From contig OX337235.1 in NCBI GenBank assembly GCA_946965045.2, forward strand, positions 620,001 through 684,000: DNA of 64,000 nt. The letters run 5' to 3'. The notes beneath the pieces were generated by a model. That model searched no databases. It saw nothing but the letters and a program-made list of their open reading frames with translations, and was not told the DNA's origin. This stretch comes from Epithemia pelagica. Taxonomy: Eukaryota > Protista > Bacillariophyta. The position numbers were made by a program, and so were the translations under genes. Shown piece after piece: positions 3,001-33,050 of the stretch. Each line of letters starts with the position of its first letter. Position 1 is the first letter of the stretch.

Positions 3001-3462
3001 AACAAACTGTCCCTGCCCATACTGAGGCCAGGACACTTTGTCTGGAGCCCTCCAGCCGGCGCTGCGGATGCCGCCCTGGAGGAGCTCCGAAAGATTAGAC
3101 ACAAGAGACAAAAATCAACTCATGTCTTCTTGTGCCATCGTCTGCTTACCCCGCGGTGGTACAGACTAATGCACAAAGCTTGCGACCTTGTCATCGAAAT
3201 CCCAGCGGGAACATCATTTTGGCCCCGTGAAAATTATGAGCCACTCATCGTTGGTTTTGCTTTTCCTTTTCTCAGGTTAAAACCATGGCAGCTGCGCGGG
3301 ACGCCAAAAATGTTCGCAGTGGAAAGGAAATTGCGAGAACTGTGGAAAATTGATGAACTGGGTGGACGGGATCTTTTGCGGAAACTTTGCATTCAGTGTT
3401 GGAAACTGGCCACCATGGTGGAAAGCATGGTGTCCAGAGTGTTATTCTTTGAACGAAGATGA
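1..3462 (+). CDS. Retroelement pol: N-terminal domain + reverse transcriptase + RNase H (frame open from base 1)
   Basis: RT motifs DVPKGESDIRMVYNGT, DMDLGEMFLNF, MGMLPSP, YMDD. RNase H motifs GDASGAGFG, SSNWRE, FFFTDN, HVSGKRM...DGISRG. The frame from base 1 (GGA GAT CCG ACT TAC TTG) has no stop, so the track start at 16 is not the real start. Confidence 0.85.
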   Translation, partial: GDPTYLGTTLPHIPSDWPVLLLLPSGWTRPALPGVQWLTVNHTRCGGITTARVQVGRRNLPPLHFQVEVRHTISAILDHSIRPVSCSAVGPSQPCYPQHSQLYVRDLKRHVLVPTTFFKTGWGHRCLTPAELGAAFDLPLWLSPTSEAHAWWHSHVLGARFIPIKIPAAVLGGALPHLEPVFVHHLDRAGEKRDGPPPHSPPMTKRPRLSPPVDAATKDGQLGTWFASLRAFLPHAAWLDDSLIATKATKADDAEAPYDLWDGRIRGVFPWLTDAALAGFRLLGLWWWRRSLYRSFLSYLRSRFGNEWLSLLPAARQRQGGGGGDTFSLYDVCVAGRSVLSQLLAASWWDWDQGSSLIFWRWNGLQQQRDAWFGTPIHVTAPLPHNKRPQRAPTADSRPRVAAKLAKVLSRGYFDTDATILSLTDYFDVPKGESDIRMVYNGTSSGLNDSLWAPNFWLPTAETSLRLLTTASYCGDMDLGEMFLNFPMDRNLRPFAGVDLRPIKDLFPSDLLEAGCTDKVRWNRLFMGMLPSPFHAVEQFYLAEEVARGSPHDLFNPCGFDEVRFNIPGSADYSPVRPWIMKWNSRTNSIAGDSVTYMDDIRIIGSLAENAWQVGRQLAARLQYFGIQDAPRKRRPPSKTPGAWAGSVQHISDTAVSKTVTQAKWEKGKAIIEQYKKAYDNSDSPSFSHKQMQRDVGFLVHLAMTYACMMPFLKGFYLSMNMWRGGRNTEGWKLSAREWVTELQEKLDAREYDTLCGFGDDGDNADKPPPQIPGVPRLKTDVGALVALFDSDDPPVIKVRCETIFIALYGSGDASGAGFGSAIQLPQKGLSYRIGVWDSDVVVGESSNWREFTNCVEALEEEANKGSLKSSEVFFFTDNSTVERCFYKGSSSSPKLLDLVIRLRRLEMAHSLRLHMSHVSGKRMIAWGVDGISRGQLNKGVMAGQPMLSFIPLHKTPIQMSDSLMGWVKSWLGPKTEWLTPMDWFTTAHDIRGWTMPTESNKLSLPILRPGHFVWSPPAGAADAALEELRKIRHKRQKSTHVFLCHRLLTPRWYRLMHKACDLVIEIPAGTSFWPRENYEPLIVGFAFPFLRLKPWQLRGTPKMFAVERKLRELWKIDELGGRDLLRKLCIQCWKLATMVESMVSRVLFFERR

Positions 3463-3690
3463 CGGATTCTACATTGCTAGCAAAAACACCTCCTATGGAC
3501 AAGACGATCTAGACCGACTACCTAGTCGCAGAAAGTTGGAAACATCAAACTAGAGATCGATCGGAGGACTTTCTGAAGGCAAGGAAGGGCGACCATCTAA
3601 TCACCCCTTTCGAGTGCGACTTGTGCATATTTCGCAAACTGCGATTCCAGGATCCAATTCGCAGCGATGTGCAAGATACCTACCTTCTAC
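3350..3690 (+). pseudogene. Frameshifted, truncated N-terminus of the probable tyrosine-recombinase ORF
   Basis: IFCGNF..WPPWWKAWCPECY (3350 frame) is followed after a frameshift near 3510-3550 by ARKGDHLITPFECDLCIFRK. From recall, this resembles the Cys-rich leader of YR ORFs in such elements. The catalytic R-H-R-Y core is absent. Confidence 0.55.
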
Positions 3691-3827
3691 ACGCAAACGT
3701 TCTTGTACAGAACTGCAAACAACGCAAAAAGACGAATCCAGCAAGAACCCTCCTCGAGAAACCAGTGTATCCTTGCAGCAGGCAAAACCGATTCAACGAG
3801 AAGCAGGGGCTACGACTGTGTCGTTGA

Positions 3828-6606
3828 GTGAACAACAAAAGGCACCTTGCTGACGTCAACAACAACAAGACTGTTATTCAAAATGGGTCGGATGAGGAGG
3901 ATGGCAACCGGAAGCGGGCCAGAGTACAGCTTGAGGTGGATGTTGATGAAGCTATAACCCACAAGCCCGAGAATGAGCATCCTCATTCTACTGTAGAAGG
4001 AGAGGACGACCACGAATCGTACGATGCATGGTCGGAGAGCGATGCCGGGTCGGTCAGCATGCTGATAGAAGATGCAGTTACCAACAATGGTCCTCCTCAG
4101 CGCAAGTTGGACATGAAGTGTTTGCAGGAATGTATTAAGAATGGCGAGGCAGCTCTGGAGCAAGTGAATGGCATGGATGTCGTTCTCATCATGGGCAAGA
4201 CGGGTGCTGGAAAGACTACGTTGATTAACGGAATTGCCCGAAAGGAATTGAAAGAAACAGTCATCCAAGAGACAAGTACCGGAGTAACAGTGGAGAAAAA
4301 TGTTTTTATGGCCACGCAGGAGCTTCCCGGCTTTGAGATTGGACATGCCAAACAGTCCATGACCAAATGCCTTCGATGCTTTGCCCCAGAACTTGAAGTT
4401 TCGTCGTCCAAGAAGAAGAGTAGAGTTGTATACGTCGACTCTCCCGGGTTTGAAGACACGGATGGCCCCGAAGTTGACATTGCCACATCGGTGATGATCA
4501 ATCAAGTGGTCAAACGATCCAAAAGTCTTCGATTTGTCATTTTGATCAATTACGCCTCATTGCTCGAAGACCGCGGAGGTTCGATGCGGGCGGTCCTCAA
4601 GCTCATTCATGTGTTTGTTGATGATTTCAAGGCCCACAAGACGAGTTTCACGTTTCTTTTTACGCATATAAATGAGATCAAGGATGTCTCAAAAGACCTG
4701 GCTGGTGCACGAAAATGTCTCTTGAAGGAGTTGATTCGAACCAGAATGGGTACCAATGCATCCGACACAGATGTCGTGCAAATTCTTGACCACATGATCG
4801 ACTACCTAATGAAGCGCAAACATGATCCCAAAAAACCTAAATACCAAATTGTGGACATTTTGCATCCCATTCCGTCAGATTTTGCAAATTTGAAGACGAT
4901 CGTTGAAGAAAGCAAGCCAGTAACAAAGAAGTTTGTCGCAGCTACCTGTGGTCTCTCACCGCAGCTGAAACTGAAACTCGGCGCTGGTCTGGAGAGTATG
5001 TTGCAGCATCTGCGTGTTCTGTTGAACAATAATTCATCGCTTGCAGAGGCCAAGGAGGCCAAGGAGGTTTCTGATTATATGCTTTATTTAATGCGCTTTA
5101 TGGACATTGAAGTGGTCCGTAGCAACGTCACAGCCTGTTCTTCCCTGGCTCAAAAGTACGCAAAACACTTGTGTGATGTCGTGGAAACGGAAACGCGACG
5201 AGGCACGTCGGTACAAGTCAAGTTTGGCCGCTCTAATGTGAAATCGCTCAAGAATGCTCTGGGACAAGTGGAACTGTTGGACAGCTTTTGCGAAGAAGGA
5301 AAACGTTTCAAGGAGGTCAATGCTTTTGTAGACCGTAAAGTTCGAGATTTTCATCAAGAGGCCATGTGTGGATTTGGGTGCGACAACTTGCACATTGTGC
5401 TTGCTCATTTACGTTGCTGGGCTGACGGCTTTGGACAGTTTCAGACTCTCTACCAGAGTGCCCATAGCCATTTCGTCCAGCTGTGCTCGAAGGAGGGTGC
5501 AAATACATTAGTGGCTTCGACCTGGATGGATTTGCTTCTGTATCACAAGACAGTTTGGAGACCTTTGTGGAAACGCTCCGCGATATCGAGCTCGTGTGCA
5601 AACTTGTGGGCCATGCTGCGGAACATGAGATTGACGTTACCGTGCCGCGTCGGGTCGTTGTCAAGGTGAGGCAAGCAATGTTAGAGGCAGTCCAAACAAA
5701 GGCGTCACTTCCAACAAGTGTATGCCCAGAACAACTGGCGGACGTAGCTCGAGTTGCACGGTCCTTAGAATTGTTTCAAAAGTTGGCGAAACGCCACCTC
5801 GTCTTTCCGTCGTTTGATGAAGCATTATCAAGCCACATCCGTAAATTGGGTCAAGAGGTGGCCACGTGCTTCTCGGAAATATATGAGAAAGCCGAAACGG
5901 CAAGTCAGAATTTTGATTCAGGTTGGAATCAAGCTCTCACTAAACTTCAGTATCAGGTTGGTTGCTTTGATGGTCTTCAATCGCCTTGCTGGGGTCCTGT
6001 AAGGGCTGGATTTGCTTCCATCATACGCAAGCTTGAATCTGTTTTGGAAGAACGGATGCGTATTGTCGAAGTTAGAGCGAAAGATGTTTTACAGCATGGG
6101 TTTCGAGACGGGGCCGAAGAGAGAATCGCGATCGATCATCTGGCTGGGTATGAGTGGTTTGACGAATTCCTACATGCCGACCACAAATTTGTGGCTCTGT
6201 CACTGAGGGGAATTCAGAAAAGCTACCAGGAGAGAATTGACTTTGTTTTGCAAGAGATGAAAAAGTACATTTCAGACCTAGTTAGCGATAACCGAGAACG
6301 ACATTCCAAGCTATGTTTGCAAGATTATGTAAGGGAAATTCATGAGATTGGGATTTTTGATACTGGTGTTGCCCCCATGGTATCTGAAGCATTTTCCAGA
6401 CTACAACAGCACATCCAATTGAAAGAAAAACAGGCTGATGAGCTTTTGATAGCCTGGGGGAAAGCGGTTTCGGAATGGAAGAAGCATCTTAACAAACCCG
6501 TCGTTGACGATACCAAAATGGATGATGAACCTCAACAGCAACTTTATGAAGCGGGAAGGCAAGTTGATGATATTTTGGGCAAGATGGAAATGCTTGCTGA
6601 CATGCA
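3828..6606 (+). pseudogene. 5' part of giant GTPase-SecA-vWA gene: TRAFAC (AIG1/septin-like) GTPase + helical region
   Basis: G1 GKTGAGKTT, G2 Thr (SMT), G3 DSPG, G4-like FLFTH. Frameshift at about 5480 (ORF 3828-5669 hands over to 5483-6616) with no plausible intron. No ATG near the 5' end. Interrupted at 6606 by the Copia element. Confidence 0.75.
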
Positions 6607-7338
6607 CTTAATGTAAACAGATATCTAGGTGTTGGTAAAGACACGTGTTAGATATAGGTGGGGTAGTCAACATAGCTCGGGTAGCCAACCTACTGCGGTG
6701 AAACGACGATGGGGCCCTCACCTTCGAATCAGCAACTAGGTCGACTCTCTTTCACAAACAGTTTGGTTACAAACTTTTGGTTTATAAAAAGAGTGAGCTT
6801 ATTCTAAGATGAAAAGTGATTTTGGAGCTGGTTTGATCTCCTCGATCCTCTAGGTATGGAACTTGTTCTATTTGTTCCATAGAGCAGTTCTTTTTGTTCT
6901 GTGCACTAGTGGGAGATCTCACCTCTCCTATTGTATCTTGTTTTGGATCTTTACTCGATGGACTTACCTTTGACACTCTTCAGGTGGCCGGATGGCCTGC
7001 CTGAGATCCATTTGTTTTCTCAATATTGAGAGGAAGATTCGGTATCCGGTGGCTCGCCCGACATGCAAATATATACGGCTGTATAGTGGGCTCGCGGTCT
7101 GGCAAGTTTTTATGTAAATAATATAGTAAGGCGTAAATCACGTAAAGTTCCTTAGTTTTGGCGAGCAGCGCGATCAGTACTCTAAAGCAGCTGCTCGATG
7201 CGTTGAGGTTCAATTGACATGCGTTGAGGTGCAACGCCTGCTTCTGATCGGCATATGGCACGTCTGACCGCACGTCACGCATATAGCTAGAGGAAATAGT
7301 CTAATGTCTAGAGAGTCGAGAGCGGTATTCTATAACTC
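6607..7338 (-). repeat. 3' LTR of Copia-1 (732 bp)
   Basis: Direct repeat of 15608-16339 (offset 9001). Two substitutions seen (tcaaCatag/tcaaTatag; tatatAcgg/tatatGcgg). Confidence 0.96.
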
Positions 7339-7346
7339 TCCCTCTC
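7339..7346 (-). promoter_or_regulatory. Polypurine tract of Copia-1
   Basis: Minus-strand GAGAGGGA directly precedes the 3' LTR, about 45 bp after the pol stop. Confidence 0.75.
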
Positions 7347-7389
7347 ATGGAGTGATTGGTGGAGAATCACGACGTGGTATGATGTCAGC

Positions 7390-9858
7390 TTACCAACCTT
7401 GATTTAATTTGCCGCAGCGCTCAAAGAGCTCTCGATTTTGGCACTTGGTGAGATAGTCTGCCTTTTGATCATTGGTGCCTACCATACTGACCTTTACTCC
7501 TCCGGGATGATCACCGACATGTTCCCAGAAGAAATGTAGGTAATTATTAAAATGTTTTGTCCGGGGTGTAAGGCGTTGCTTGGTAGCTAGGTGGAAAGCT
7601 CCACTGTTGTCTTCAAAGACTTCAGAGAATATAGTTGGCTTTTCAAATGGGAGTTCTAGGTTCTCTAGAAGCTCTTCAATGACTCGTCTTGTTGCAATAA
7701 CACTACGCATTGCTTGAGACAAAGCATGATATTCCGCTTGAAGTGTGCTTAGAGCTACTGAAGATTGAAGTTGCGATCTCCAAATTAGAGGACATCTACA
7801 GAAGGTTAGGATGTATCCCGTTCGTGACTTGGCACTAACCGGGTTATCCTGTGGTTCACAACCATGGAGTCCCGCAAAATCAGCGTCTACATAACAATCT
7901 AGCTTGAAATCTTTAGTTGGAGTAAAGATTGTACCTTTGTCCTTGGTTCTTGATAGATAACGAACAATGGTCTTGATGGCTGTTGCATGTGACTTTTTAG
8001 GTGCTGAACTGAATCTAGCGACTTGACTAACTGCGAAGGCTATATCAGGTCTGGTATTCGTGGATAAATAGAGTAGCATTCCGACTATGGAGCTATAATG
8101 CCAGCTTTCTTTCATGGGCTCACCATCGGGATCGCTGCCGAGACCTAGCTGAGTCGCTGGGGTCCAATTCGGATTGCAGTCGTGTAGTCCCGTGGCATTT
8201 ATTATCTTGGCAATTAACCCCTTCTTGGTCATAGTAATAGACTTATTCTCATTTCGAATAAAGTTGATGCCCAAATAGTCGGTGAAATTGCCTTCTTTCT
8301 TAAGTGATAGGCCTTTCTTCTGTAGTCGTTCGATTAAATCATCAATAAGTTTCATATCAGGGGCACAAACGCCACAGTCGTCAACCCATAGAAAAATGAT
8401 GATGTTGGACTTGTAAAGAAGACATTCGTCATGCTTACTTGATTTGAAACCGTCTTCCTTAAGCGCTTGTACTAGATGGATATACCACAATCTAGGTGCA
8501 GAAGACAGGCCATATAGACTTTTGATGAGTCTTAAGCAGGTCGTTCCGGGCTTACTAGATCGAAACCCTCTAGGTAGATGAATCCATACAGGTTCATCTA
8601 AGGTAGCCTGTACAAATGCGTTGTTGAAATCGATACACGCAAGTTCCCAACCCAAGATTAAACTAAGGGTGAGCACAATACGGATAGTACTCCAGTGAAC
8701 CACTGGACTATAGTTCTCTTGTTCCGTTTCTTGTAGGTCTCCTCTAACACAATATCGAGCCTTATGCTTGATAATATCTCCGTCTGGAGATCGCTTGCGT
8801 TTGAATACCCATGTCCCAGGTAAAATTCGTGTATTAGCCTGGGATTGAGGGACTTCTTCCCAAGTTCCTTTCTCCTCTAGTTCGGTTATTTCCTTGCTAG
8901 CTGCCGCTTTCCATTTCTCTATGTCTGTATCTCGCATAGCCTCATCGTAAGAGAGGGTGTCGGGATCAGAGAGAGAAGCTTTGTGAACTGTTAAAAGGTC
9001 ACTAGGCTCATGAGATGGTGGCATTAGAGAAGGGAGGTTTGCTAGATTGCCTTCTTCAACTAAGCGGGTAGGTCGTTTAATAGTCCTAGCAGATCTCCTA
9101 GTTGGAAGGATCGTCGGTTGGACTGCACGTGGAGGCGGTCGCGGTGGTAATCTAGCTGGAGAAGGAGAAGGGTTGTGAAGAGGGGACTCCCTCTGAGACG
9201 GCGACTCCCTCGGAGAAATGGTAACCTTGTGGGGTGACAGATGGGGAGAAGGCAAACAAGGGGTACTCGGAGCTGTAGATTCAACTCCTGATGATACGGA
9301 CACCTGTCTTTGAGGTGTCTGGTTAGTTGTCTCCCTCTGAGGAGGTGACTCCAACGATGTGGTCAATGGAGTTGGAGTGGGATCCTCACTGGGAGTTGGT
9401 AAAGAAGCGGAGAGTGGCACTGGGAGTGGACGTGTGTTAGGTGTAGATGATGACGTCAACGGAAGATATGGTTGGCGAGTAGCAATTCGTTGTGCGACAT
9501 CTGATTGACGTCGAAGATACGTATTTTGGGTAGCTTCATCAATAGTAGTAGGGGAGTCTAGATCGTCCGTTTCGGATGAATCATCAGTGATATATTGATA
9601 TGCAGAATCTCCAAACAGGCGATACCAAGGTTCGGATGCAAAGTCCGGAAGCTGGTCGACAGACATGGCAATAGTGCTGAACCAATCGTCGAACACTACA
9701 TGGAACTGGGGCGTAATATAGCCAGTTTGAGGATTTAAGACTAATGGAACAGTACTGGCATGTTGCGTACTTAACCCCATAAGTTGGCAGCGAATAGATT
9801 TTGGCTTCCAGCGGGGTAGCTTCTTCCCGTCTGCATGGGACACGTGTGAAAACATCAT
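7390..9858 (-). CDS. Copia-1 pol 3' part: integrase C-terminus, RT, RNase H (disconnected from upstream ORF)
   Basis: GKKLPRWKPKS, WVFKRKR..KHKARYCVRGD, DFNNAFVQ, SLYGL, LWVDD, YVDADFAG, EDNSGA, ADYLTK. Confidence 0.9.
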   Translation of the reverse strand: MMFSHVSHADGKKLPRWKPKSIRCQLMGLSTQHASTVPLVLNPQTGYITPQFHVVFDDWFSTIAMSVDQLPDFASEPWYRLFGDSAYQYITDDSSETDDLDSPTTIDEATQNTYLRRQSDVAQRIATRQPYLPLTSSSTPNTRPLPVPLSASLPTPSEDPTPTPLTTSLESPPQRETTNQTPQRQVSVSSGVESTAPSTPCLPSPHLSPHKVTISPRESPSQRESPLHNPSPSPARLPPRPPPRAVQPTILPTRRSARTIKRPTRLVEEGNLANLPSLMPPSHEPSDLLTVHKASLSDPDTLSYDEAMRDTDIEKWKAAASKEITELEEKGTWEEVPQSQANTRILPGTWVFKRKRSPDGDIIKHKARYCVRGDLQETEQENYSPVVHWSTIRIVLTLSLILGWELACIDFNNAFVQATLDEPVWIHLPRGFRSSKPGTTCLRLIKSLYGLSSAPRLWYIHLVQALKEDGFKSSKHDECLLYKSNIIIFLWVDDCGVCAPDMKLIDDLIERLQKKGLSLKKEGNFTDYLGINFIRNENKSITMTKKGLIAKIINATGLHDCNPNWTPATQLGLGSDPDGEPMKESWHYSSIVGMLLYLSTNTRPDIAFAVSQVARFSSAPKKSHATAIKTIVRYLSRTKDKGTIFTPTKDFKLDCYVDADFAGLHGCEPQDNPVSAKSRTGYILTFCRCPLIWRSQLQSSVALSTLQAEYHALSQAMRSVIATRRVIEELLENLELPFEKPTIFSEVFEDNSGAFHLATKQRLTPRTKHFNNYLHFFWEHVGDHPGGVKVSMVGTNDQKADYLTKCQNRELFERCGKLNQGW

Positions 9859-12800
9859 GGGGGCTTATACCAGTCTCAGTATTGGGTACATGGTTGTGTA
9901 AGAAAACGGCATGTGAAACGGCCATGGGCCAGAGCGCCGGATCGGCCAATTCTGGCCACTGTATGGCAGAGTGTAACATCATGGTGCGTGCAATCCACAT
10001 AATTGTTTGTATTGCCCTTTCAGCTATTCCGGCATGATGATGTGCCCCGACTCCTGCGAACCGCAAAATTTGAGCAAAGTTCTCAAGCGATTGGGAGTAG
10101 GATTTTGAGGTGAAAGCAGCTCCGTTGTCCGTTAGGTATTTGAGAGGAACTACACCCACTTCTCTACAAAATAGCTCAAAGGATCCTTTAACACTAAGCG
10201 TTTCATGAGTGTTAAGGTGTGATTGAAATCCTATCCATGTATACCCCGAGGCGTGATCGACAAAGATCGCGCCGCCCACATAAAGGTTGTCAACTTTTGA
10301 CTTCCCCCGAGAGTCAAATCTTCGTCCTTTTGTGGAGCACACAAAATGATCTACAGAGATACATTGTCCAGGATGGAGGTTGCCATCTTTGGTGACTCCT
10401 CGTCGATCCTTGACAATGGTTGTTGTCGAACCGGGTTCGGTGCGACGACGTTGTTTCCCAAATTGGCATGCTGCGCATAATGGTAAGTCTTGCAAAAGAG
10501 ATGCAGCTTGTGAGTGTAAGCGACGAGTCTTTTCTGTTGTTGCAAGGATACCAGTGCGCATCAAGAACTGTACCTTGCGAAAGTTAAGATGTCCAAGTCT
10601 GTAATGCCATTTGAGTAATTCCTTTTGAGGAGCGGTAAGATTTTCATTGTGTTGTGATACTTCGTTCACTGTTGTGTTGAGAGCTACCGAGCCAGTCATC
10701 ATGTTCTGCTTGTCGTACCCAAACGACATGGGCAGATTGTTGCTGGGATTCACCATGACAGTGACTTCTCGGCGGGATTCATCTCCTGGAATACCGGTTA
10801 AGGTAAGTGTGTAACCGTCTTGAATTATTTTCTCGCCGAAGTATGTTTGAAGTAACGATTGCGTCGACAAAAGTCTAACCGATGTTTTTGGTACTAGGAA
10901 CGCAGGGAGTTTGAGCGATCGGGGCATACCATTGGTGTCCAGGATCGTCCAAACAACTGTTCCACGGGCAGTAGCTTTCATCCGGTTGGCGATGCCCTTT
11001 ACTTGAAGACTTGGCAAAGAGCGAATCGGTCCCACAAAATCTTTCTCGTCGTTGGTAATGCAGACACTGGCCCCAGAGTCCCAGATAATTGGATAAGAGG
11101 CGTGTGAAGGCATAGAAGAGCGAAGTTTCGATGGATCCTGGAGTGCTGCTCTCAAGGCTTGTTGGGTGATATGTTCCCAAGGATGATGGTTCAACTCGGT
11201 GGTTGAGTGGTGGCAACGTGGTGGTTCCTGCAAGAGCATGGCCATTCCCATGAATTTGTTCTGGTTGAGTGGCGATGCAGGGTAGAAGTTGGGTACTTGA
11301 GGAAACGGTACGTTGCTTAAATTGCAGCAAAAGTTGCTGCTGTTTCTAGTATTCGATCTCTGACGGGTGTTGCCTGTCAGGTTGATAGTTGGTTCGGCGG
11401 AGGTCGACGGCTGGAAGCAAGAGGTACTGCGCCGGTTTTTGCAGCGGTGACTCGTCGGCATCCTGCGACGGTTGGTCGGTGGTGTGGAGGTCATGGCGCT
11501 CGGCGGTCGGTTGGGTACACGGCGGCGCTTGCGGTTGTGCCGGCTTGATCCGGAGTAAACGTGCCTGTTGTTCGTCGTGTTCCTGTTTCTCCCTCGCAGC
11601 GGAGTGACATGGCCTCGGAAACCCAGAGGGCCACCCGTCTCGGTGGATGCTGACAATCCCAACAATCTGCAAACCAACACAACAATCAACCTCAAAGCGG
11701 AGAAACAAAATCCAACAATCAAACTTGGAGGTGGAAGAGATCGTGGCTTTGAGCGGATTGGATTGCGGGTGTGGATGCGAGCGAGTCGGTACTTGAATCG
11801 GTTGACATGGTAGTTGGGGTGGTGTCCGAACCATGGTGAGTCAGGATAGCGAGAAGAGACGCGCCGAATGACCACCAAAACAACAATCCAACATGAGAGC
11901 CAAGTGATGATGGCAGGCATGAAGGATGGATGAGTCACGTATGAGAGCAGTAAGAACCATAGACCTGTATATAAGTCGTAGATTCCTGTTAGAAAATGGC
12001 TTAGACCGATGTAAATTGTAGTCTTTCCTTCATTGTAATAGGTGTCAGCTCCCGTAGAGGGTGAAGCGGTAGGGTAGAGCCACTGGATCACAGGTAGGAC
12101 AAGGACAAGGTGGGCGAGTGCAACTAAGAAAAGGTGCAGCCACGCAGAAGTTTCTGCCGTAGGTGTCTCGTCCGACTCACGCGCCAGCCGATCATCAAAA
12201 TCGCGACGGACCGGCGAAGGGGTCACGTGTCCGAACCTGAATGGGGTGTAGTGGACTTCTACGCATTTCCCTACCAGAGAATCCTCGTCGGATGATACTG
12301 TTTCGTCCATAGTGTCAATTGGGACGTTTTGTCGGTCCTGGGGACCTCCCTCCGATTCATTATTCTTGATCCAGAAATTTTGGGTCTCATTTTTAGAACA
12401 ATCGTCGACCCATGCCATGTTGGCAAAGTATTTGGTGAGCGGCACGGTTTTTGCTGAGTCGCCACCACTGCTTGCTGTGTCTGCATCGGTAGGTACGTAC
12501 TTCTCCCCAAGAGTGTTGTTGGGTGTAAACGAAGTAGAAGACAAACTGTCTGCACTACTCTCACGATGTGTTCGGAGTTGTGTTGATGCAGGTGTAAAGC
12601 GATGGCCAATGGACGACGTGTCCATCGGTTGAATATCGAAGCAAGGCATCATCGGTCCAGGAGGAATGGGGAACATGCCAGGGAAAGAGTGTTCCGGTCG
12701 AGGGTGATTTGGGATCAAAGTCCCATCGACATAGTATCCCATTGCCCATTCTTCTTCCTTGACACGCTGATATGCTTCAGCGACGGTAAGTTTTGGTTCA

Positions 12801-15187: not shown

Positions 15188-15589
15188 GGTGTTGGAAGCA
15201 ACAATCAGCCGCTTTTGGGAAGAACGAGACGCGTCGGTTTGCTGGGCAGAGCCAGAGAGAGGTGCGGTCTGTTGCTGGGGTTCTTGCTGGGTGTTTGCAA
15301 GATCAGGTGGTACACTGAGTGGAGGCTCAGTGGGGTCAGTCCGATTCGGGTCAGGAGTGGTGTCAGACTCGTCGACACTCTCTGCTGTTACGAGTTCGAA
15401 ACTGCCAGCGCCACTAGAGGTAGGAGAGTCTTGGTCTTCCTCCGTTGTGGCTACGGGGTGGATGCCTTGCTAGGGATGTCCACTCCTTGCGCGCGTATAG
15501 ATGCCGTAGTAAGAGGTGAACCTTATAGAGTTCTCCCTCTTGGTAATATAATAGTCGATCGATCAGGAAACGTCTGGTTTACCAGCCTT

Positions 15590-15607
15590 ATTTGGGCTCA
15601 GCAACCA
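15590..15607 (-). promoter_or_regulatory. Putative primer-binding site of Copia-1
   Basis: Minus-strand TGGTTGCTGAGCCCAAAT starts immediately after the 5' LTR. TGG is complementary to tRNA CCA. The priming tRNA was not identified. Confidence 0.6.
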
Positions 15608-16339
15608 CTTAATGTAAACAGATATCTAGGTGTTGGTAAAGACACGTGTTAGATATAGGTGGGGTAGTCAATATAGCTCGGGTAGCCAACCTACTGCGGT
15701 GAAACGACGATGGGGCCCTCACCTTCGAATCAGCAACTAGGTCGACTCTCTTTCACAAACAGTTTGGTTACAAACTTTTGGTTTATAAAAAGAGTGAGCT
15801 TATTCTAAGATGAAAAGTGATTTTGGAGCTGGTTTGATCTCCTCGATCCTCTAGGTATGGAACTTGTTCTATTTGTTCCATAGAGCAGTTCTTTTTGTTC
15901 TGTGCACTAGTGGGAGATCTCACCTCTCCTATTGTATCTTGTTTTGGATCTTTACTCGATGGACTTACCTTTGACACTCTTCAGGTGGCCGGATGGCCTG
16001 CCTGAGATCCATTTGTTTTCTCAATATTGAGAGGAAGATTCGGTATCCGGTGGCTCGCCCGACATGCAAATATATGCGGCTGTATAGTGGGCTCGCGGTC
16101 TGGCAAGTTTTTATGTAAATAATATAGTAAGGCGTAAATCACGTAAAGTTCCTTAGTTTTGGCGAGCAGCGCGATCAGTACTCTAAAGCAGCTGCTCGAT
16201 GCGTTGAGGTTCAATTGACATGCGTTGAGGTGCAACGCCTGCTTCTGATCGGCATATGGCACGTCTGACCGCACGTCACGCATATAGCTAGAGGAAATAG
16301 TCTAATGTCTAGAGAGTCGAGAGCGGTATTCTATAACTC
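15608..16339 (-). repeat. 5' LTR of Copia-1 (732 bp)
   Basis: Direct repeat of 6607-7338, bounded by the PBS on one side and TSD ATGCA on the other. Confidence 0.96.
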
Positions 16340-19300
16340 ATGCATCAATGCTCAACAGATGGTACGCTGAGTAAGCTTACAGCGAATATTCGTCAATGCT
16401 TTCATCAATTTGAGGAGGATAGTCAAGAGATAGTCAAGTGCCAAGGAAGGTATTTCGCCAAGCACCGTATTATATGTGCTTTGCACGAATTCGCTAATTT
16501 ATCTCACATTCCTATCAAGGGAGCCGAAACGATGAAAGTTGAAGCAAAAGCTGGAATAAAGCAACATGCAATTTCAATCAAACAAATGATATCGGATGGA
16601 TCAGATCCACCAAAGATCGAAAGAGAGCTAAAAGCGTTGAGAAAGTCTGTATCAATTGACCATTTCACTGGAAACGAAGGTACATCCTGTCTTCATGTCA
16701 TTCAAAATATCCAAGAGGAAGAGGGCGAAGAGTTGGAAAGCGAAATACGAAACCTGATTGAGCACCGAGAGTACTCACGCGTCATCGATCTCCTGAAGCC
16801 CTACAAAAACTGCCGAACTACTCATACCAACAAGTGTCGTACAATTGTCTCCACAAATTTGCTCCGTATTCTTTATGAATCTTTCTCGGAACTCTCGGCT
16901 CGTAATATGAGCGGAGATGGTCTCGATACCGTCGCAGAAAACATAGCTGTCCTTAAGCGATTTTTGGACGGGCTTGGAGACTTTACTGTAGATTGCAGAC
17001 TTTCCTTACCGCGAGATATACGAAAACTCAAGACGAAGATCAATTCTTGCCTGTGCTTGATATGCTCAGATATGAAAGAGTCAGCGAAACGGCCAGACTT
17101 TGTCAGCCTCGGTACAGGAAAAATTGCTGTAAAAGCATTCTCGTCATCCAAGATTCATGTCTACATTTCGAAAGCAACTAGATCCCAAATGAACAATGCA
17201 TTGGCTGCTTTCAAGGAAGCAGTTGATTCCGTTTCACGTCATCTGGAGAATTTCGTTTCGTCTGGCTTGACAGAAGGCTCTTTGTTAGTTGGTGATCTAA
17301 TTAGTTTGCGCGAGGCCCGTGATCACGATTCCCAAACTCTGGAGGAACTCTCGACGATCTATACATCGATACAAAAAGATCTTATCAAGCAATTGAACGA
17401 GAAGTACAGGACTATATCAATGGCGGTTGAACGCCATATGTGTTTCGAAGAAGCCATAGCGTGGATGAGAGCACTTGGGCGACAGATGGACTTTGGTTTG
17501 CGCGACCATCTACGAACCAAGGACCTTGTTTTTGACATCAACGCACAGGTGGATCGTTGGCGTTCGCAGAAGACTGATTACGAGAAGGACTTGGAGTTTG
17601 AAGGAATTGACGCCGACATTAAGCTGGACAAATGGTCTCATTCCCTCGCTAGTTTGGATCCAAAGTCAAAGTGGTGGTTCCCCGGGTTCCTGCGGTCTGG
17701 GCGAGACAGTGCCTATTGGCGCCTTTGTTACACGCTTGAAACCAAGATAGAACGAGTTTTTATGTCTGGAAAAGCGGCACTATTAAGGAACAAAGATCAT
17801 GAAACGGCATAGGAGAAGATATCAATGTTGGACTTAATCAGCAAGAAGCTGGGTAAGAATGTCTCGAAATCTATTGTAGCTCGAGACGAATTGAAGAAAA
17901 TTGCATTGGATTCGTTTCTTTGCCTTTGCCGTGATGCCCAACATGCATTGGAGGTCGGAGGACTAAGTCATCAGTTCCAGCGGCTCTTCCCTGACTATCG
18001 AAATTTTGTTATCCATGTTCCGGTAGCAATGCTTTCAGATTCCGGAAAGAATGCTTTCTCTTCGACAAATCAAAAAAATACGAAGAACTTGATAAAAAGA
18101 TTGCTGAGTTGGAAAGCTTATTAGAGTCATTTGACTTCCGGAAAATTAAGGAACCGGTTGAGCATCTGCGGTTGGATGGGGGCTTCATAGCAGATAGGTT
18201 CACACTGCTGCATGAGGAAGTGGAATGTTCCGAACATGCGAATGTTGATCGGTGGTTAGAAAAGATTCAGTCCCTTTCCATGACTCACTTTTGCCGTGGT
18301 CGCCGTCTTGACAAGATAAAGCATTTCGCCGTCCTCGGGTTGCCTCCTTCGGCTTCTCTGACGGACATCATCCAGACAAAGGAAACAATGGATGGACAAC
18401 TAAAAAGAAAGGGTGGCTACAAGAATGACAGCGAGTTGAGAGCGAAGTTACGAAAAGTTGAGATTGCTTATTTGGAGTTGACCAAATATGAGAGCACGGA
18501 CATTGAGAATGTTGCACAACCTTTTGATGATGTAGTCTTTTCTCTTGGAGATCGCCTGCGAAAGCGAACGAGAGAGTTGCTACAACAACAGAAATATCAT
18601 CAGGTCGAGCAGTTGCTGTTTAAACTGGATGGTCTGCATTTATTGGATGATCTAGTCAGTCCTCCGATGGAGTCAAACAAGACTTTACAAGCGGTAAGCC
18701 AATTGGTAAAACAGCACGTAGACGGGGTGAGGGTTGATGTAAATACGAACTGGTCAGAACGAAAATACAAGTCCGTCAATGAGAATATTGCTGATCTGAA
18801 ACAAATGGAGGCGAGTTTCAAGTCTTACCATGATATTTTTCCAACATCATGGAACACCGGAGTATTACGTGCTATCGAATCCGAGATTGAGTCGCTGGGC
18901 GCTCGGGCACGTGGCTTTCTGGAATCGAAAGTTACAGCGTACCAGAAGTTGGATGACTTTCGTCGATGCTTTGTACGGATGGGGTATGTCCTTGATGAAT
19001 TGGTTTGGTTCAAAGATATCACGAAATCGACGATGTATTCAGTCCTGGAGGCTTGTTTGAATGCTGATTGGGGCCACGGGTTCTTGTTTGAACTGGGACT
19101 TAGTCTACAACGAGGTGACGCAAATGCAGATGATGACGAGAATCGCATTTGTCAAATGATCGTTGCAGAGTTTAGTCATTTCAAGGAGGTTCAGACTATG
19201 GTGTGGAATGAAGAGACATGCCAGAAGCCTGCCGATGATACAGTTCATGATATACGAGGAGAGCAACGAAGTAGCTCAGGCACGAAAGAGTTGGACATTG

Positions 19301-22300
19301 ATAAGCACGAGCTGTTGAAGAAATTTTGGTCCTTTGAAGAGAAGTACAAGCTGTATTTGGCTGAATATCTGAATCCAGATGCAGATATAAATGAGCTTGT
19401 ACAAACAGTGGTTAGAGCAGCGACAAGTTTACAACCTATCAAATGTGCTGGTGGATGGACAACGGAGGTGAAAGAACGTCTTCCGTCGGTAGTGGCAGGT
19501 GTTTTTGCTGTATTTACGGTCCTCAAATCTTCTGCAACGTATAATCGAATTGGCAATGACGAACTAGGAGAAAAAATTCTCATGAAACCACACAACATCC
19601 AAGTCTTGACGATTCTGTCCATGTTTGGATGTGGTGATTTGACAAGCTCTAATCTTGAGAACCAAGTCATGCAGATCCGCACAGGTGAGGGAAAATCTCT
19701 GATTCTTGGTGCCTCGGCTGTTGTACTGGCGCTTTTTGGTTTCCGTGTTCGTTGCGTATGCTACAGCGAGTATCTTTCAAATCGCGACTACGAGTTATTC
19801 AAGGATTTGTTTGGATGTTTCCAGTTGACAGATAAAATCACGTACTCCAAGATCACGACACTTTCCGAAGATTGCACAAGAGCAAAAGGGGACATCCGCA
19901 AGTTGACCGGTGGCCTATTAAGAGGTTCTCTCGCCCATGATGGTACCGCGATTCGGACGACAGGACAAGGCGGCCTTGACGAGGAGATTTTGGTTGTGGA
20001 TGAATTTGATGTATTCTTTGGCTCCGACTTTTATGGCCAAACATATAATCAGGTTTACCAGTTGCAAGAAGACGAAATTGCTGAGATACTTAAATTCATT
20101 TGGGCGAACAACATGCGAGGAGGACCAAAACTGAAACTTGCGGATGTACAAAGAATCGAGCCATACCGTCACCTTGTGCAGAAGTATCCTGACTTTGCTT
20201 ATGTATTCGACAACGAAATTTTGTTGATGATTGATCAAGTGAAGAGAGTCGACGAGGAACCATACCATCTTGACGAAGTTACGGGACGCATCGGGTACAA
20301 AGTAATGGATACAATCGAGTACGATGTTACTTATGGATACTGTACGATGTTTGCATACCTCAAGGAAGCCGAAAAGGGAAAACTGCAGAATGCCGAGACA
20401 AGACTGGCGAATGTTCTTGCAAGGCCCGTGTCATGTGGACAGTTTTCGTATGCCGGTATCAGTCCACTTCGAATTCTAGGTGTTTCTGGAACAGTGGAGG
20501 CAATGGGTCAATACGAACACGATGTTCTGGCGAAGTATGGAATTGAAAGGTTTATCTACGTTCCGAGTGTCTATGGTCAATCCAATTTCAAATTTGACAT
20601 GGCTGGAGATGGTATATTCGTGGAACCATCGGTTAGCGATTTCTTTCACAAAATCACGGATGTCATTCTCGATGTGACGAAGCAAAGGAGGGCTGCGATC
20701 GTGTTCTTTCATGATAACTTGCGCTTACATGAATACAAACAAAGTTCATTCTTCAAGAGGCTTGGTCGTCGTCAAATTCGATTGCTGACAGAGGATATGA
20801 GCGCTGATGATAAAGGTTTTGTTGTGAAAAAAGCTGCGACGGCTGGTCAGATAACATTGTGTACAGCGTCGTTTGGTCGAGGAACAGATTTCTTTTGCAA
20901 GGATGATGTTGTGCAAAAGAATGGCGGTGTCCACGTCATCCAAGCTTTTTTGTCGGAGGAACTCAGTGAGGAGGTTCAAATCAGAGGCCGAACAGCTAGG
21001 CAGGGGAAGCAAGGATCTTATCAGATGGTATTGCTTGAATCTGACCTCGAGACTCACTTTGATATCGAGCGAGGTGCAAAAGACAAAGTTCCAAAAAAGG
21101 ATAGATATGAATGGCTTTCTAATGCCCGCCGAAAGAAGCATCAAAGTCATTGCCATGTGATGGACGTCAATCTCGAGGGTGCCACCGAAAAGGATAAGAA
21201 CACAAATCTTTACTTTGATTCTCTTCTACAGGGTAACGCGCGGAGGGCACAGGACTTGTTCAAAGAGTTGTACTTTTCAATGAAAACCCAGGCATTGGCT
21301 GCAAACACGGAAATTGACATTGCGTTTCTGATTGATGTCACTGGAAGCATGGGGCCTTACAGTTCTGCGATTGCGGCCACTATCCGAACACTGATTGACA
21401 AGCAGGGAGTAGTCATGGGACGCCTCAAAGCTAACTACCCAGACACGGAGTTCACCTTCCGCACCGCAGTGATGGCTTTTAGGGACATTGATGACAAGGC
21501 GAAACAATTCACTGAGAGTGTATGGCAATCAAAGAGTCGTTTCACAGACGTTGCCGATGAAGCAATTCGTTTTGTCGAACGTGAAACTAAACAGTCATCT
21601 GGTGGTGGTGATTTGGCCGAAGATATTCTAGGAGCTCTTGATCGCTCTGCAGAATGGAAGGGCCCAGGAGCTTGGACTTCAAGACTTAAGTTTATGATGG
21701 TTCTCACAGATGCGGCTGCACATGGGTTGGCCAATCCGGCAGTAGCAGGTGGTCCAAACGGAGACCACTATTCTTCACGGCATCCTCTTGGTTTGACCGC
21801 TCATAGTGTGATGGGTAAACTTGTTTCCAAGGGGATTGATCTGTTCATGTGTTCGTTCAACCCAATGGCAACATTGAAGACTGAAGAGGAACTTTCCCAG
21901 ACGTATCTCAACCACCCTAGCAATAAGGATCAACGTGAAGTGACAACTATCCCCCTAGTACCTACTTCCAAACAGTCAGGTGCTCACGATCCAGTGAGCT
22001 ACAATCGACACATTGTTTTTGTGCTGGATGAGTCAGGATCAATGTACAATGACTGGTCGGGGGTAGTGGTTGCTTACAATCAATACATTTCACGTCGCCG
22101 GCAGTACCAGTGCGACTCAGATCTCGTGTCGGTTGTCCAGTTTTCTAGTCAATCAAGAATCACAATTCAGCAGCAGAAAATCCAAGAGGCTCCGAAGTCC
22201 TTGCACTTTCACAATGGTGGAACTCAGTTCAGTCCAGCTGCTCAGAATGCCTGTGCCTTGGCAAGGGGTACTCCGTCGACGCATGTACCAGTCATTGTCT

Positions 22301-22623
22301 TTATGAGTGATGGTTGCGCAGACGATGCTTCACAAGCAGCATCGTATTTTTCTTCACTTAATAATTACATCAAGGGACGCACCGGCAGTGATCTTGAGCT
22401 TCATGTAATTGCCTTCGGGTTGAATGCAAGTCAGGCTCAACTCAGTCAAATTGCCGCCGCGTCGCCGATTGGCAAGGTTCGCGCCAGTACCGACACGGCG
22501 GACTTGTCCAAAGTCTTTGAAGAGATTGCGGGTGGTGCGAATGTGGCTGGACTCCTCGAGGCCGAAATTGGAAAACGAGTTTCGGAGGCCGTGGGCAACA
22601 AACTTGCCCTCGAATTCATGTAA
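16340..22623 (+). pseudogene. 3' part of giant gene: helical region, J-like domain, SecA-type SF2 ATPase, two vWA domains
   Basis: Removing the Copia and one TSD restores the frame (..MLADMHQCSTDG..). In-frame TAG at 17810-17812 and frameshift in the A7 run at 18072-18078. J-like HFAVLGLPPSAS..DI...KVEIAYLEL. SecA motifs TGEGKS, YLSNRD, DEFD, GVSGT, FGRGTDF, QIRGRTARQG. vWA motifs LIDVTGSM and VLDESGSM / GGTQF / FMSDG. Confidence 0.85.
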
Positions 22624-32525: not shown

Positions 32526-33050
32526 AAAACGAATTATATATCCACAGTATGAATGATTATGAATCGACAATCCTTGTGATTTCGCTAGGACAATGAGGAT
32601 GACAGCTACTATACAAGCATGTGACTTCTTGGAGATGCTAGCGTCCGTTCTCCGATGCACATAGAGTTAGGAGTAGGAGTTCAAATCTAGCAGGTGCTTT
32701 GGACGTTTGTCGGACCGATCAAGAGATTGGAGTTAGCTCGTTCGTCACACTCTCTATTAGTCGAGTAAAGAGTACGATAATGGTCGAGACAACGTTCCAA
32801 GTCAATAATTCTAGAGGGGTATGTTGATCACTTTGCCATCCATGGAAACTCAACATCGCGTCAAAGATCGGGCATAGAGCTATCAAAGCTATCTGTCCTT
32901 CGAAATGGTTCGAGAAAAGCGAGTACGACGCGCAAGCACAGCGCCTGCATGCAAACATTTTGCGTGACACTTTTGAAGAACGGCGACAGGCCCTACTCGC
33001 ATTCTTTCAAAAAAACGAACGTCGCGCCACTTTTTTTCTGTGTCTCGACC

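What the first reader, a model, noticed from the sequence alone, without database searches (positions are those of the whole stretch)
3828..22623. Giant GTPase - J-like - SecA ATPase - vWA - vWA protein: candidate conflict/immunity machine
Seen: after removing Copia-1 and correcting two frameshifts and one stop, one intronless protein of about 3,000 aa can be rebuilt. It has a TRAFAC GTPase (GKTGAGKTT, DSPG), about 1,000 aa of helical sequence, a J-like hairpin, a full SecA-type SF2 core (TGEGKS, DEFD, GRGTDF, QxRGRTARQG) and two different MIDAS-bearing vWA domains. Known: canonical SecA is a Sec translocation motor with no GTPase or vWA partners, while NTPase+vWA giant proteins are typical of lineage-expanded conflict systems. 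Inference: a two-NTPase sensor/remodeller in which the GTPase switches, the SecA motor threads polypeptides and the vWA domains select targets. I know of no characterised protein with this combined architecture. This is the strongest candidate for an undescribed system in the window.
Basis: partly seen in the sequence, partly recalled or inferred. Interest (0 to 1): 0.8.

Follow-up and report, generated by a model that had tools for sequence, protein, structure and literature searches.

The report
Dead copy of giant SecA-like gene
A diatom gene for a roughly 3,000-residue protein (a GTP switch, a long helical arm, a worn-out J domain, a motor like bacterial SecA and two vWA docking domains) is really there, but this copy is a recently duplicated pseudogene split by a Copia retrotransposon. 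An intact twin lies 36 kb upstream, and the unstudied family is widespread in eukaryotes.

Summary
Four + strand ORF pieces (3828-22623) join into one gene once a 9.7-kb Copia element is removed (LTRs 6607-7338 and 15608-16339, target duplication ATGCA). The remaining lesions are a +2 frameshift (5482), a TAG (17810) and a -1 frameshift (18078). An uninterrupted 3,121-codon paralogue 36 kb upstream (99% identical) shows the reconstruction is correct and that this copy is a pseudogene from a recent ~36-kb tandem duplication.

All domains were verified:
- a TRAFAC G domain;
- a J domain that has lost its HPD motif;
- a SecA-type motor (Z 23-25 to SecA, about 16 to DEAD-box helicases), with no sign of SecA's PPXD or wing domain and no room for its two-helix finger;
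- two MIDAS-bearing vWA domains.

The fused architecture is conserved in many diatoms. Its core also occurs in pelagophytes, a green alga, ciliates and rotifers. This genome has at least nine members, and canonical SecA genes lie elsewhere in it. I found no paper on the family.

The conflict/immunity reading is untested: there is birth-and-death turnover, but the neighbouring genes are ordinary. The scan had already found this family on adjacent DNA (s1-238731) and on another contig (s1-248279).

The parts
2900..3686 (+). 3' end of a multi-copy transposon that abuts the left edge of homology with the intact paralogue. It replaces the gene's original 5' flank.
   Evidence: At least 30 copies in the genome, all ending near query position 787. 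The paralogue's upstream DNA is single-copy and was not found in the 24 kb of DNA upstream of the window copy.
3687..6606 (+). 5' part of the pseudogene: N-terminal region, G domain and the first part of the helical arm
   Evidence: 98.8-98.9% identical to paralogue positions 2938-5854
4071..5198 (+). TRAFAC-class G domain with its helical extension (P-loop at 4194, DxxG at 4437)
   Evidence: Pfam MMR_HSR1. Model pLDDT 91. Z about 13 to Era, GIMAP7, GIMAP2, EngB and Toc34. G1, G2 Thr and G3 are invariant in 38 homologues.
5482..5483 (+). Lesion 1: 2-nt insertion (TG) causing a frameshift at codon 655 of the paralogue
6602..6606 (.). Target-site duplication ATGCA, left copy
6607..16339 (-). Lesion 2: Copia-type LTR retrotransposon, 9,733 bp. 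LTRs at 6607-7338 and 15608-16339. Two ORFs: 15187-9584 (gag, protease, integrase) and 9858-7390 (reverse transcriptase).
16340..16344 (.). Target-site duplication ATGCA, right copy
16345..18321 (+). Rest of the poorly conserved helical arm
   Evidence: Contiguous with paralogue position 5855 onwards. Low conservation across 51 homologues. No Pfam domain.
17810..17812 (+). Lesion 3: nonsense codon TAG (CAG in the paralogue, codon 1518)
   Evidence: Also present in the contig of run X1.
18078..18078 (+). Lesion 4: 1-nt deletion in an A-rich run, causing a frameshift at codon 1607
   Evidence: Also present in the contig of run X1.
18322..18489 (+). Degenerate J domain (no HPD motif)
   Evidence: The family profile hits DnaJ J domains at E 4e-17. 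HPD is present in most homologues but is replaced here.
19252..21282 (+). SecA-like ATPase module: NBD1 (TGEGKS 19681, DEFD 19999), an insert at the PPXD position, NBD2 (GRGTD 20875, QIRGRTARQG 20977) and a long scaffold helix
   Evidence: Pfam SecA_DEAD and P-loop_SecA. PDB profile E 5e-17 to SecA2/SecA. Model pLDDT 89. Foldseek E 1.7e-17 and VIA Z 23-25 to SecA, against about 16 for DEAD-box helicases.
21313..21972 (+). vWA domain 1, divergent, MIDAS DVTGS at 21334
   Evidence: VWA_4 matched by 15 of 20 homologues. DxTGS, a later Thr (nearly invariant) and Asp are conserved.
22006..22530 (+). vWA domain 2, MIDAS DESGS at 22027. The stop codon ends at 22623.
   Evidence: Pfam VWA E 8.5e-12

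Best explanation
The feature is a young pseudogene. A tandem segmental duplication of about 36 kb copied an intact, intronless gene of about 2,940-3,120 codons (C8:587768-597130). The window copy then lost its 5' flank to one transposon, took a Copia insertion inside the helical arm, and acquired one nonsense codon and two frameshifts. The parent gene belongs to a multi-copy family that no paper I could search describes. In the full form, conserved across diatoms, its members are soluble giant proteins built in a fixed order: a TRAFAC G domain, about 1,100 aa of fast-evolving helical arm, a J domain, a SecA-type DEAD motor with a scaffold helix, and two MIDAS vWA domains. Other eukaryotes share the G domain, the motor and at most one vWA domain. 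Inferred mechanism for intact members (about 35% likely in this form): a nucleotide-driven protein-remodelling machine that works like midasin. The MIDAS domains hook client proteins. The SecA-type motor clamps and pulls on an extended polypeptide. The J domain, where HPD survives, hands the chain to Hsp70. The G domain gates assembly or localisation. Shown here: the domains, their order, the invariance of the catalytic motifs, purifying selection on them, and the death of this copy. Inferred: the substrate, the coupling between modules, and any role in conflict or immunity.
For: An intact 3,121-codon open frame is 99% identical to the window copy, and the two flanks of the Copia element meet on it without a gap. 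The LTRs differ at 2 of 732 positions and a target duplication is present. The duplication extends from window 3687 to 32931. Differences between the two copies are 25 synonymous, 36 non-synonymous and 1 stop. pN/pS is 0.22 in the catalytic domains and 0.84 in the arm, so the copy was under constraint for part of its life. The contig of run X1 carries both the TAG and the 1-nt deletion. There are at least nine family loci in the genome, two of them uninterrupted. The same architecture occurs in over 50 full-length homologues from diatoms; pelagophyte, Cymbomonas, Tetrahymena and rotifer proteins share the N-terminal P-loop, the SecA-like module and at most one vWA domain. ATPase motifs I, II, V and VI are invariant in 42 sequences, and G1, G2 and G3 are invariant in 38. 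SecA is the best structural match. The J-domain profile gives E 4e-17. No transmembrane segment was found. Between the two intact paralogues dN/dS is 0.09-0.24.
Against: No RNA data exist, so expression of any member is unproven. The mechanism is analogy only. The module shows no Pfam signal for SecA's PPXD or wing domain and leaves no room for a wing domain or two-helix finger, the parts that engage preprotein and SecY. HPD is lost in this subclade, so Hsp70 coupling cannot be general. The G4 NKxD motif is absent, so GTP specificity is unproven. X1 may be the data set the assembly came from, so its support for the lesions may not be independent.
Confidence: 0.85

Rival explanations
1. The breaks are not real. 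The locus is a working gene whose apparent frameshifts and stop are assembly errors, small introns or programmed recoding.
For: The 1-nt deletion at 18078 lies in an A-rich run, a typical long-read error context. Contigs of runs X2-X4 over this stretch show the intact letters.
Against: The X2-X4 contigs match the paralogue at all 25 variable sites, so they represent the paralogue and not this copy. The X1 contig keeps both the TAG and the deletion. The 9.7-kb Copia element with a target duplication sits inside the coding sequence. There is no room for introns, because the paralogue reads straight through the same positions. The 5' flank is replaced by a transposon.
Confidence: 0.04
2. The protein is a diverged organellar SecA orthologue, that is, a Sec translocation motor.
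For: SecA HMMs and SecA structures are the best matches.
Against: Scores are at most 65 bits against cut-offs of 725-1493 bits. Canonical SecA genes scoring 1062 and 850 bits exist on C14, C23 and C1. No PPXD or wing-domain Pfam signal appears in the window copy, its paralogue or the precomputed lists of the homologues. No transmembrane segment was seen; a targeting signal was not looked for. The module is embedded in a 3,000-aa multi-copy protein.
Confidence: 0.01
3. The SecA-like motor of the family acts on RNA or another nucleic acid, as DEAD-box or RIG-I-like proteins do, rather than on polypeptides. The giant protein would then be a nucleic-acid sensor or remodeller.
For: The SecA motor is a DEAD-box relative. 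eIF4A, Dbp5 and DDX17 align at Z 15-16, and MDA5/LGP2 appear in Foldseek at about 1e-6. The SecA parts that handle preprotein show no Pfam signal or no room.
Against: SecA stands clearly above helicases: Z 23-25 with 377-557 residues aligned, against Z 16 with about 330; sequence E 5e-17 against 6e-5. There is an insert at the PPXD position. J and vWA partners point to protein clients.
Confidence: 0.15
4. Intact family members are housekeeping proteostasis or trafficking factors, not immunity or conflict proteins. Copy turnover simply reflects the transposon-rich region.
For: The neighbours are ordinary: EMP70, SET, ENaC-type channels and a PP2A B'' subunit. There is strong purifying selection on the catalytic domains. 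No effector-type domain (TIR, death, nuclease or protease) was detected by Pfam in the window copy or its paralogue, or listed for the homologues.
Against: Features typical of conflict families are present: at least nine copies in two subfamilies, tandem clusters recurring in other diatoms, pseudogenes, large expansions in rotifers, Reticulomyxa and Hexamita, a fast-evolving arm and patchy distribution.
Confidence: 0.4

Closest known systems
Bacterial/plastid SecA and accessory SecA2 (preprotein translocase ATPase)
   Same: Two-lobe DEAD motor with SecA-type motifs (TGEGKS, DExD, GxSGT, GRGTD, QxxGRxxRQG), an insertion at the PPXD site and a long helix after NBD2. Best structural match: Z 23-25, Foldseek E 1.7e-17.
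   Different: No PPXD or SecA_SW (wing/scaffold) Pfam signal. No room for a wing domain or two-helix finger before vWA1. No C-terminal zinc tail. Scores are far below family cut-offs. The module is embedded in a soluble 3,000-aa protein. The genome has separate canonical SecA genes.
Midasin/Rea1 and VWA8 (giant ATPases ending in a MIDAS/vWA domain)
   Same: The logic of a large motor, a long linker and a terminal MIDAS domain that hooks a protein client. This comparison rests on established knowledge of midasin and is an analogy only.
   Different: Their motor is an AAA+ ring, not a SecA-type SF2. They have no G domain and no J domain. The only sequence match to midasin is its P-loop.
TRAFAC GTPases of the Era/EngB and GIMAP/AIG1/Toc34 groups
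   Same: G-domain fold, with G1, a switch-I Thr and G3 DxxG conserved. Z 12-13.6. GIMAP7 is the top Foldseek hit.
   Different: The subfamily is not resolved because the Z values tie. No NKxD G4 motif (FTHxxE instead). The domain is fused to a roughly 2,700-aa C-terminal body.
J-domain co-chaperones (DnaJ/Hsp40, Sec63)
   Same: The family profile matches J domains at E 4e-17, and most members keep HPDK.
   Different: This copy, its intact twin and the closest Epithemia homologues have lost HPD. By established knowledge of J domains they should therefore not activate Hsp70.
SecA-like 'helicase-related' and GIMAP-type GTPase domains listed among Amoebophilus effector proteins (Zhang et al. 2012, PMC3482391)
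   Same: The paper lists the same two unusual domain types among the effectors of an intracellular bacterium. A gammaproteobacterial MAG protein is 40% identical to the rotifer SecA-like module (P0151).
   Different: That paper gives only a list of domains, with no architecture or function. I did not test the relation to the eukaryotic family.

Membership tests
SecA (preprotein translocase ATPase) | DEAD motor NBD1+NBD2 with SecA-type motifs I, II, III, V and VI | tested here: met
   Motifs are present and invariant in 42 homologues. 3bxz SecA motor: Z 23.2, rmsd 3.2 over 387 residues.
SecA (preprotein translocase ATPase) | Preprotein cross-linking domain (PF01043) | tested here: inconclusive
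   PF01043 was not found in the window copy or its paralogue, nor in the precomputed Pfam lists of the roughly 230 family homologues. An insert of about 120 aa sits at the same position in the model.
SecA (preprotein translocase ATPase) | Helical wing domain and two-helix finger (PF07516), C-terminal tail | tested here: not met
   No PF07516 hit. Only two helices (63 residues) follow NBD2, and MIDAS1 starts 18 residues later.
SecA (preprotein translocase ATPase) | Score above the curated family cut-off | tested here: not met
   Best score 64.7 bits against a cut-off of 862 (NF006630). TIGR00963 gives 27.5 bits against 800. True SecA genes in this genome score 850-1062 bits.
SecA (preprotein translocase ATPase) | Works with the SecYEG channel at a membrane | not testable with these tools
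   No transmembrane segment in the protein. No partner data.
J-domain proteins | J-domain fold/sequence profile | tested here: met
   Profile A4 against DnaJ structures, E 4e-17
J-domain proteins | HPD motif between helices II and III | tested here: not met
   Replaced by KRKGGYKND in this copy and its twin. Present in most other homologues.
vWA/MIDAS domains | vWA profile match and the MIDAS motif DxSxS...T...D | tested here: met
   vWA2: Pfam VWA E 8.5e-12, DESGS. vWA1: weak VWA_4 match, with DxTGS and a later Asp invariant and a later Thr nearly invariant.
TRAFAC-class GTPases | G1 P-loop, G2 Thr and G3 DxxG on a G-domain fold | tested here: met
TRAFAC-class GTPases | G4 (N/T)KxD guanine-specificity motif | tested here: not met
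   The position reads FTHxxE in diatoms and FTKY in distant members. Base specificity is therefore open.
Copia-type LTR retrotransposon (the inserted element) | Paired LTRs, a 5-bp target duplication, and the order gag-protease-integrase-RT | tested here: met
Processed or unprocessed pseudogene | Disabling lesions relative to an intact close paralogue | tested here: met

The most novel reading that the evidence does not exclude
Intact members of this family are a so far undescribed class of eukaryotic cytosolic machine. In it a SecA-derived motor, freed from the Sec channel, unfolds or extracts proteins captured by MIDAS domains and passes them to Hsp70. A G domain controls the machine, and cells deploy it against invaders such as viruses or intracellular bacteria. 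The fast-evolving helical arm would be the recognition surface.
Probability: 0.15. Interest if true: 0.85.

Novelty: new variant of a known kind. Interest (0 to 1): 0.5.

Why it matters
SecA is regarded as a motor dedicated to Sec translocation in bacteria and plastids. Here the same kind of motor sits in soluble 3,000-residue eukaryotic proteins, with invariant catalytic motifs, beside a G domain, a J domain and two MIDAS domains. The family is present across several eukaryotic supergroups and expanded in diatoms, rotifers and foraminifera. No paper I could search mentions it. If a member were characterised, it would show what a SecA-type motor does without a channel, and possibly reveal a new protein-remodelling or defence system in ecologically important algae. 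The locus itself matters less. It documents birth-and-death turnover of the family and gives a dated example: duplication at about 1.2% synonymous divergence, then a Copia insertion at 0.27% LTR divergence.

Tried and rejected
- **Introns or recoding at the breaks.** Rejected, because the paralogue reads through the same positions.
- **Organellar SecA orthologue.** Rejected.
- **Subfamily of the G domain.** Foldseek favours GIMAP7, but VIA-align ties Era, GIMAP, EngB and Toc34 at Z about 13. The subfamily stays open. The sequence profile against the PDB mostly hit generic P-loops.
- **Helical arm.** No Pfam family was found. The Atlas feature search gave dynein-tail and WASH-like helical scaffolds, with a recognition value below the useful range, so this is only a lead.
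- **Expression.** No RNA run holds the stretch, so expression could not be tested.
- **Reads.** The runs are contigs only. They cannot give copy-specific depth or confirm the Copia junction.
- **Literature.** Four searches for a described eukaryotic SecA-like/vWA/J/GTPase protein found nothing relevant.
- **Defence island.** The neighbours are ordinary genes.
- **Not done.** I did not run the exhaustive representative search, because relatives were already plentiful. I did not run complex prediction, because I make no binding claim.
Full report
**1. What is at the locus**

The + strand between 3828 and 22623 carries four long ORFs: 3828-5669, 5483-6616, 16340-17812 and 18109-22623. Two long - strand ORFs lie between them. 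The - strand ORFs carry RVT_2, integrase core and gag-pre-integrase domains. They are framed by 732-bp direct repeats at 6607-7338 and 15608-16339 that differ at only two positions. The 5-bp target duplication ATGCA sits at 6602-6606 and 16340-16344. This is a young Copia-type LTR retrotransposon of 9,733 bp, inserted in antisense. Removing it together with one ATGCA copy joins the second and third ORFs in frame.

**2. Proof from an intact twin**

A six-frame search of the window's own genome (60.5 Mb, 23 contigs; the window is C8:620001-684000) found a 99% identical copy at C8:587768-597130. It is one uninterrupted open frame of 3,121 codons, with the first Met at codon 181. The two flanks of the Copia element align to adjacent bases of that copy (5854 and 5855).

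Against the twin, the window copy has:
- a 2-nt insertion at 5482;
- a CAG>TAG change at 17810;
- a 1-nt deletion at 18078;
- a +2/-1 pair at 3837/3850, upstream of the first Met.

Homology starts at 3687, directly after the end of a transposon present in at least 30 copies. The twin's own upstream DNA is single-copy and was not found in the 24 kb upstream of the window copy. Downstream, the homology runs on to at least window 32931. So a tandem duplication of about 36 kb made this copy.

Contigs of public run X1 keep both the TAG and the 1-nt deletion. Contigs of runs X2-X4 over the same stretch carry the twin's letters at all 25 variable sites, so they represent the twin. X1 may be the assembly's own data, so this is only partial corroboration. 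No RNA run holds the stretch.

**3. History**

The two copies differ by 25 synonymous changes, 36 non-synonymous changes and one stop. pS is 1.2% and pN/pS is 0.42.

| Region | pN/pS |
|---|---|
| G domain, SecA-like and vWA parts | 0.22 |
| Helical arm | 0.84 |

The contrast between the arm plus J region and the catalytic domains gives Fisher p = 0.02. The copy was therefore still under constraint for part of the time since duplication. LTR divergence of 0.27% places the Copia insertion later than the duplication.

**4. Domains**

*G domain.* The P-loop GKTGAGKT, a switch-I Thr and DSPG are invariant across 38 homologues. The AlphaFold model (pLDDT 91) is a TRAFAC G domain. Foldseek ranks GIMAP7 first. 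VIA-align ties Era, GIMAP7, GIMAP2, EngB and Toc34 at Z 12.7-13.6, so I leave the subfamily open. The NKxD motif is absent (FTHxxE).

*Helical arm.* About 1,100 residues with no Pfam family and low conservation. The two ends that I modelled are helical. The Atlas feature search points weakly to dynein-tail-like scaffolds.

*J domain.* The family profile matches DnaJ J domains at E 4e-17, and most members keep HPDK. This copy, its twin, the neighbouring paralogue and the closest Epithemia proteins have lost HPD.

*SecA-like module.*
- Pfam finds SecA_DEAD and P-loop_SecA.
- The profile hits SecA2/SecA structures at E 5e-17, against 6e-5 for the best DEAD-box helicase.
- The model (pLDDT 89) matches SecA at Foldseek E 1.7e-17.
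- VIA-align gives Z 23-25 with 377-557 residues aligned. Helicases reach about Z 16.
- Motifs I, II, V and VI are invariant in 42 sequences.
- An insert of about 120 residues sits where SecA has its PPXD, and a 45-residue helix follows NBD2.
- PF01043 and PF07516 are not found in the window copy or its twin, nor in the precomputed Pfam lists of the family homologues. MIDAS1 begins 18 residues after the last helix, so there is no room for a wing domain or two-helix finger.

*vWA domains.* vWA2 is a plain Pfam VWA with DESGS. vWA1 is divergent: VWA_4 is matched by 15 of 20 members, with DxTGS and a later Asp invariant and a later Thr nearly invariant.

*Membrane segments.* No transmembrane segment was found.

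**5. The family**

This genome has at least nine loci in two subfamilies.
- Four vWA-bearing genes lie within 90 kb on C8: the twin and a 3,611-codon gene, both uninterrupted with motifs intact; a copy split over several frames; and the window pseudogene.
- One further vWA-bearing gene lies on C11.
- Four more distant copies in which no vWA domain matched lie on C11 and C5.

Between the two intact C8 genes dN/dS is 0.09-0.24, and the arm is only 37-48% identical.

Outside this genome, over 50 full-length proteins of 2,700-3,500 aa share the architecture. Most are from diatoms. The best hit is Epithemia clementina at 72%, so the organism is a diatom near that genus. Pelagophyte, Cymbomonas (with an added kinase), Tetrahymena and rotifer proteins share the N-terminal P-loop, the SecA-like module and at most one vWA domain. 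The SecA-like module also occurs in dinoflagellates, Hexamita, Reticulomyxa, Hydra and Ectocarpus. The nearest Atlas fold cluster is eukaryotic. All source names are 'hypothetical', 'helicase-related' or 'SecA family profile domain-containing'. Tandem pairs recur in other diatoms; for example, consecutive locus tags SGBAC_004162/004163 pair a vWA-bearing member with a vWA-less one.

Canonical SecA genes scoring 1062 and 850 bits lie on C14, C23 and C1. The giant proteins score at most 65 bits on SecA models.

**6. Function**

Shown: the domain order, invariant NTPase and MIDAS motifs, purifying selection on them, a fast-evolving arm, gene turnover, and the death of this copy.

Inferred: a soluble mechanochemical machine in which MIDAS domains hold a protein client, the SecA-type motor clamps and pulls an extended chain, the J domain (where intact) recruits Hsp70, and the G domain gates assembly. 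This resembles the logic of midasin, by analogy from established knowledge only. I give this form about 35%.

An RNA-directed role gets about 15%, because SecA's client-handling parts show no signal here and DEAD-box proteins are the next-best fold.

Whether the family serves immunity is open. Turnover, expansions and patchy distribution fit that idea. Ordinary neighbours (EMP70, SET, ENaC-type channels, PP2A B''), the absence of effector domains and the lack of expression data do not.

**7. Literature and earlier scan notes**

Four full-text searches found no description of this eukaryotic family. The nearest mention is a list of 'SecA-like helicase-related' and GIMAP-type domains in Amoebophilus effectors (PMC3482391).

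The scan has met the family before: on the adjacent cluster (s1-238731) and on another contig (s1-248279). I agree with both on the architecture and the lack of literature. I differ on one detail: I find two uninterrupted genes in the C8 cluster, not one.

**8. Verdict**

The locus is a pseudogene of an uncharacterised but widespread family. It is interesting at the family level and ordinary at the locus level.

Noticed in passing
window 7390-15187 (- strand): In the Copia element, about 900 aa of low-complexity, Pro/Ser-rich and strongly hydrophobic sequence lies between the gag zinc-knuckle region and the protease DSGA motif. The gag-protease-integrase ORF is therefore 1,867 aa, far longer than usual. 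No Pfam hit in that stretch.
   Followed up: partly
window 3687-32931 versus G000:C8:587937-613706: A tandem segmental duplication of about 36 kb at 98-99% identity. It also copies the downstream EMP70 and SET-domain genes. The upstream copy carries an extra segment of about 6.3 kb.
   Followed up: partly
window 32949-34559, 45827-47413 (+) and 51569-53143 (-): Three genes of the amiloride-sensitive sodium channel (ASC/ENaC) family, Pfam E about 1e-59 each. An unexpected family to see in triplicate in a diatom.
   Followed up: no
G000:C14:17930-20455, C23:25254-27779, C1:1820484-1823087: Three canonical secA loci. Two score identically, so they are probably the same organellar sequence on two contigs. 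The third, on a large nuclear contig, has one in-frame TAA.
   Followed up: no
paralogues at C8:587768-597130 and C8:567897-578729: Synonymous divergence between the two intact paralogues is uneven: about 0.66 in the SecA-like part but above 1.8 (saturated) in the N-terminal half. This suggests gene conversion of the 3' half, or a mosaic origin.
   Followed up: no
protein P0151: A gammaproteobacterial MAG protein is 40% identical over 99% of the rotifer SecA-like module. This is either contamination or transfer between eukaryotes and intracellular bacteria.
   Followed up: no
window 35283-41462 (+): A second Copia-like ORF of 2,059 aa, with RVT_2 only at residues 1528-1716. Like the first element, it has an unusually long N-terminal part.
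   Followed up: no
window 16345-20825, run X1: The X1 contig is a mosaic. It shares the window's letters at the lesions and at about 12 other diagnostic sites, but the twin's letters at 9 sites. This could mean strain differences, gene conversion or a chimeric contig.
   Followed up: no
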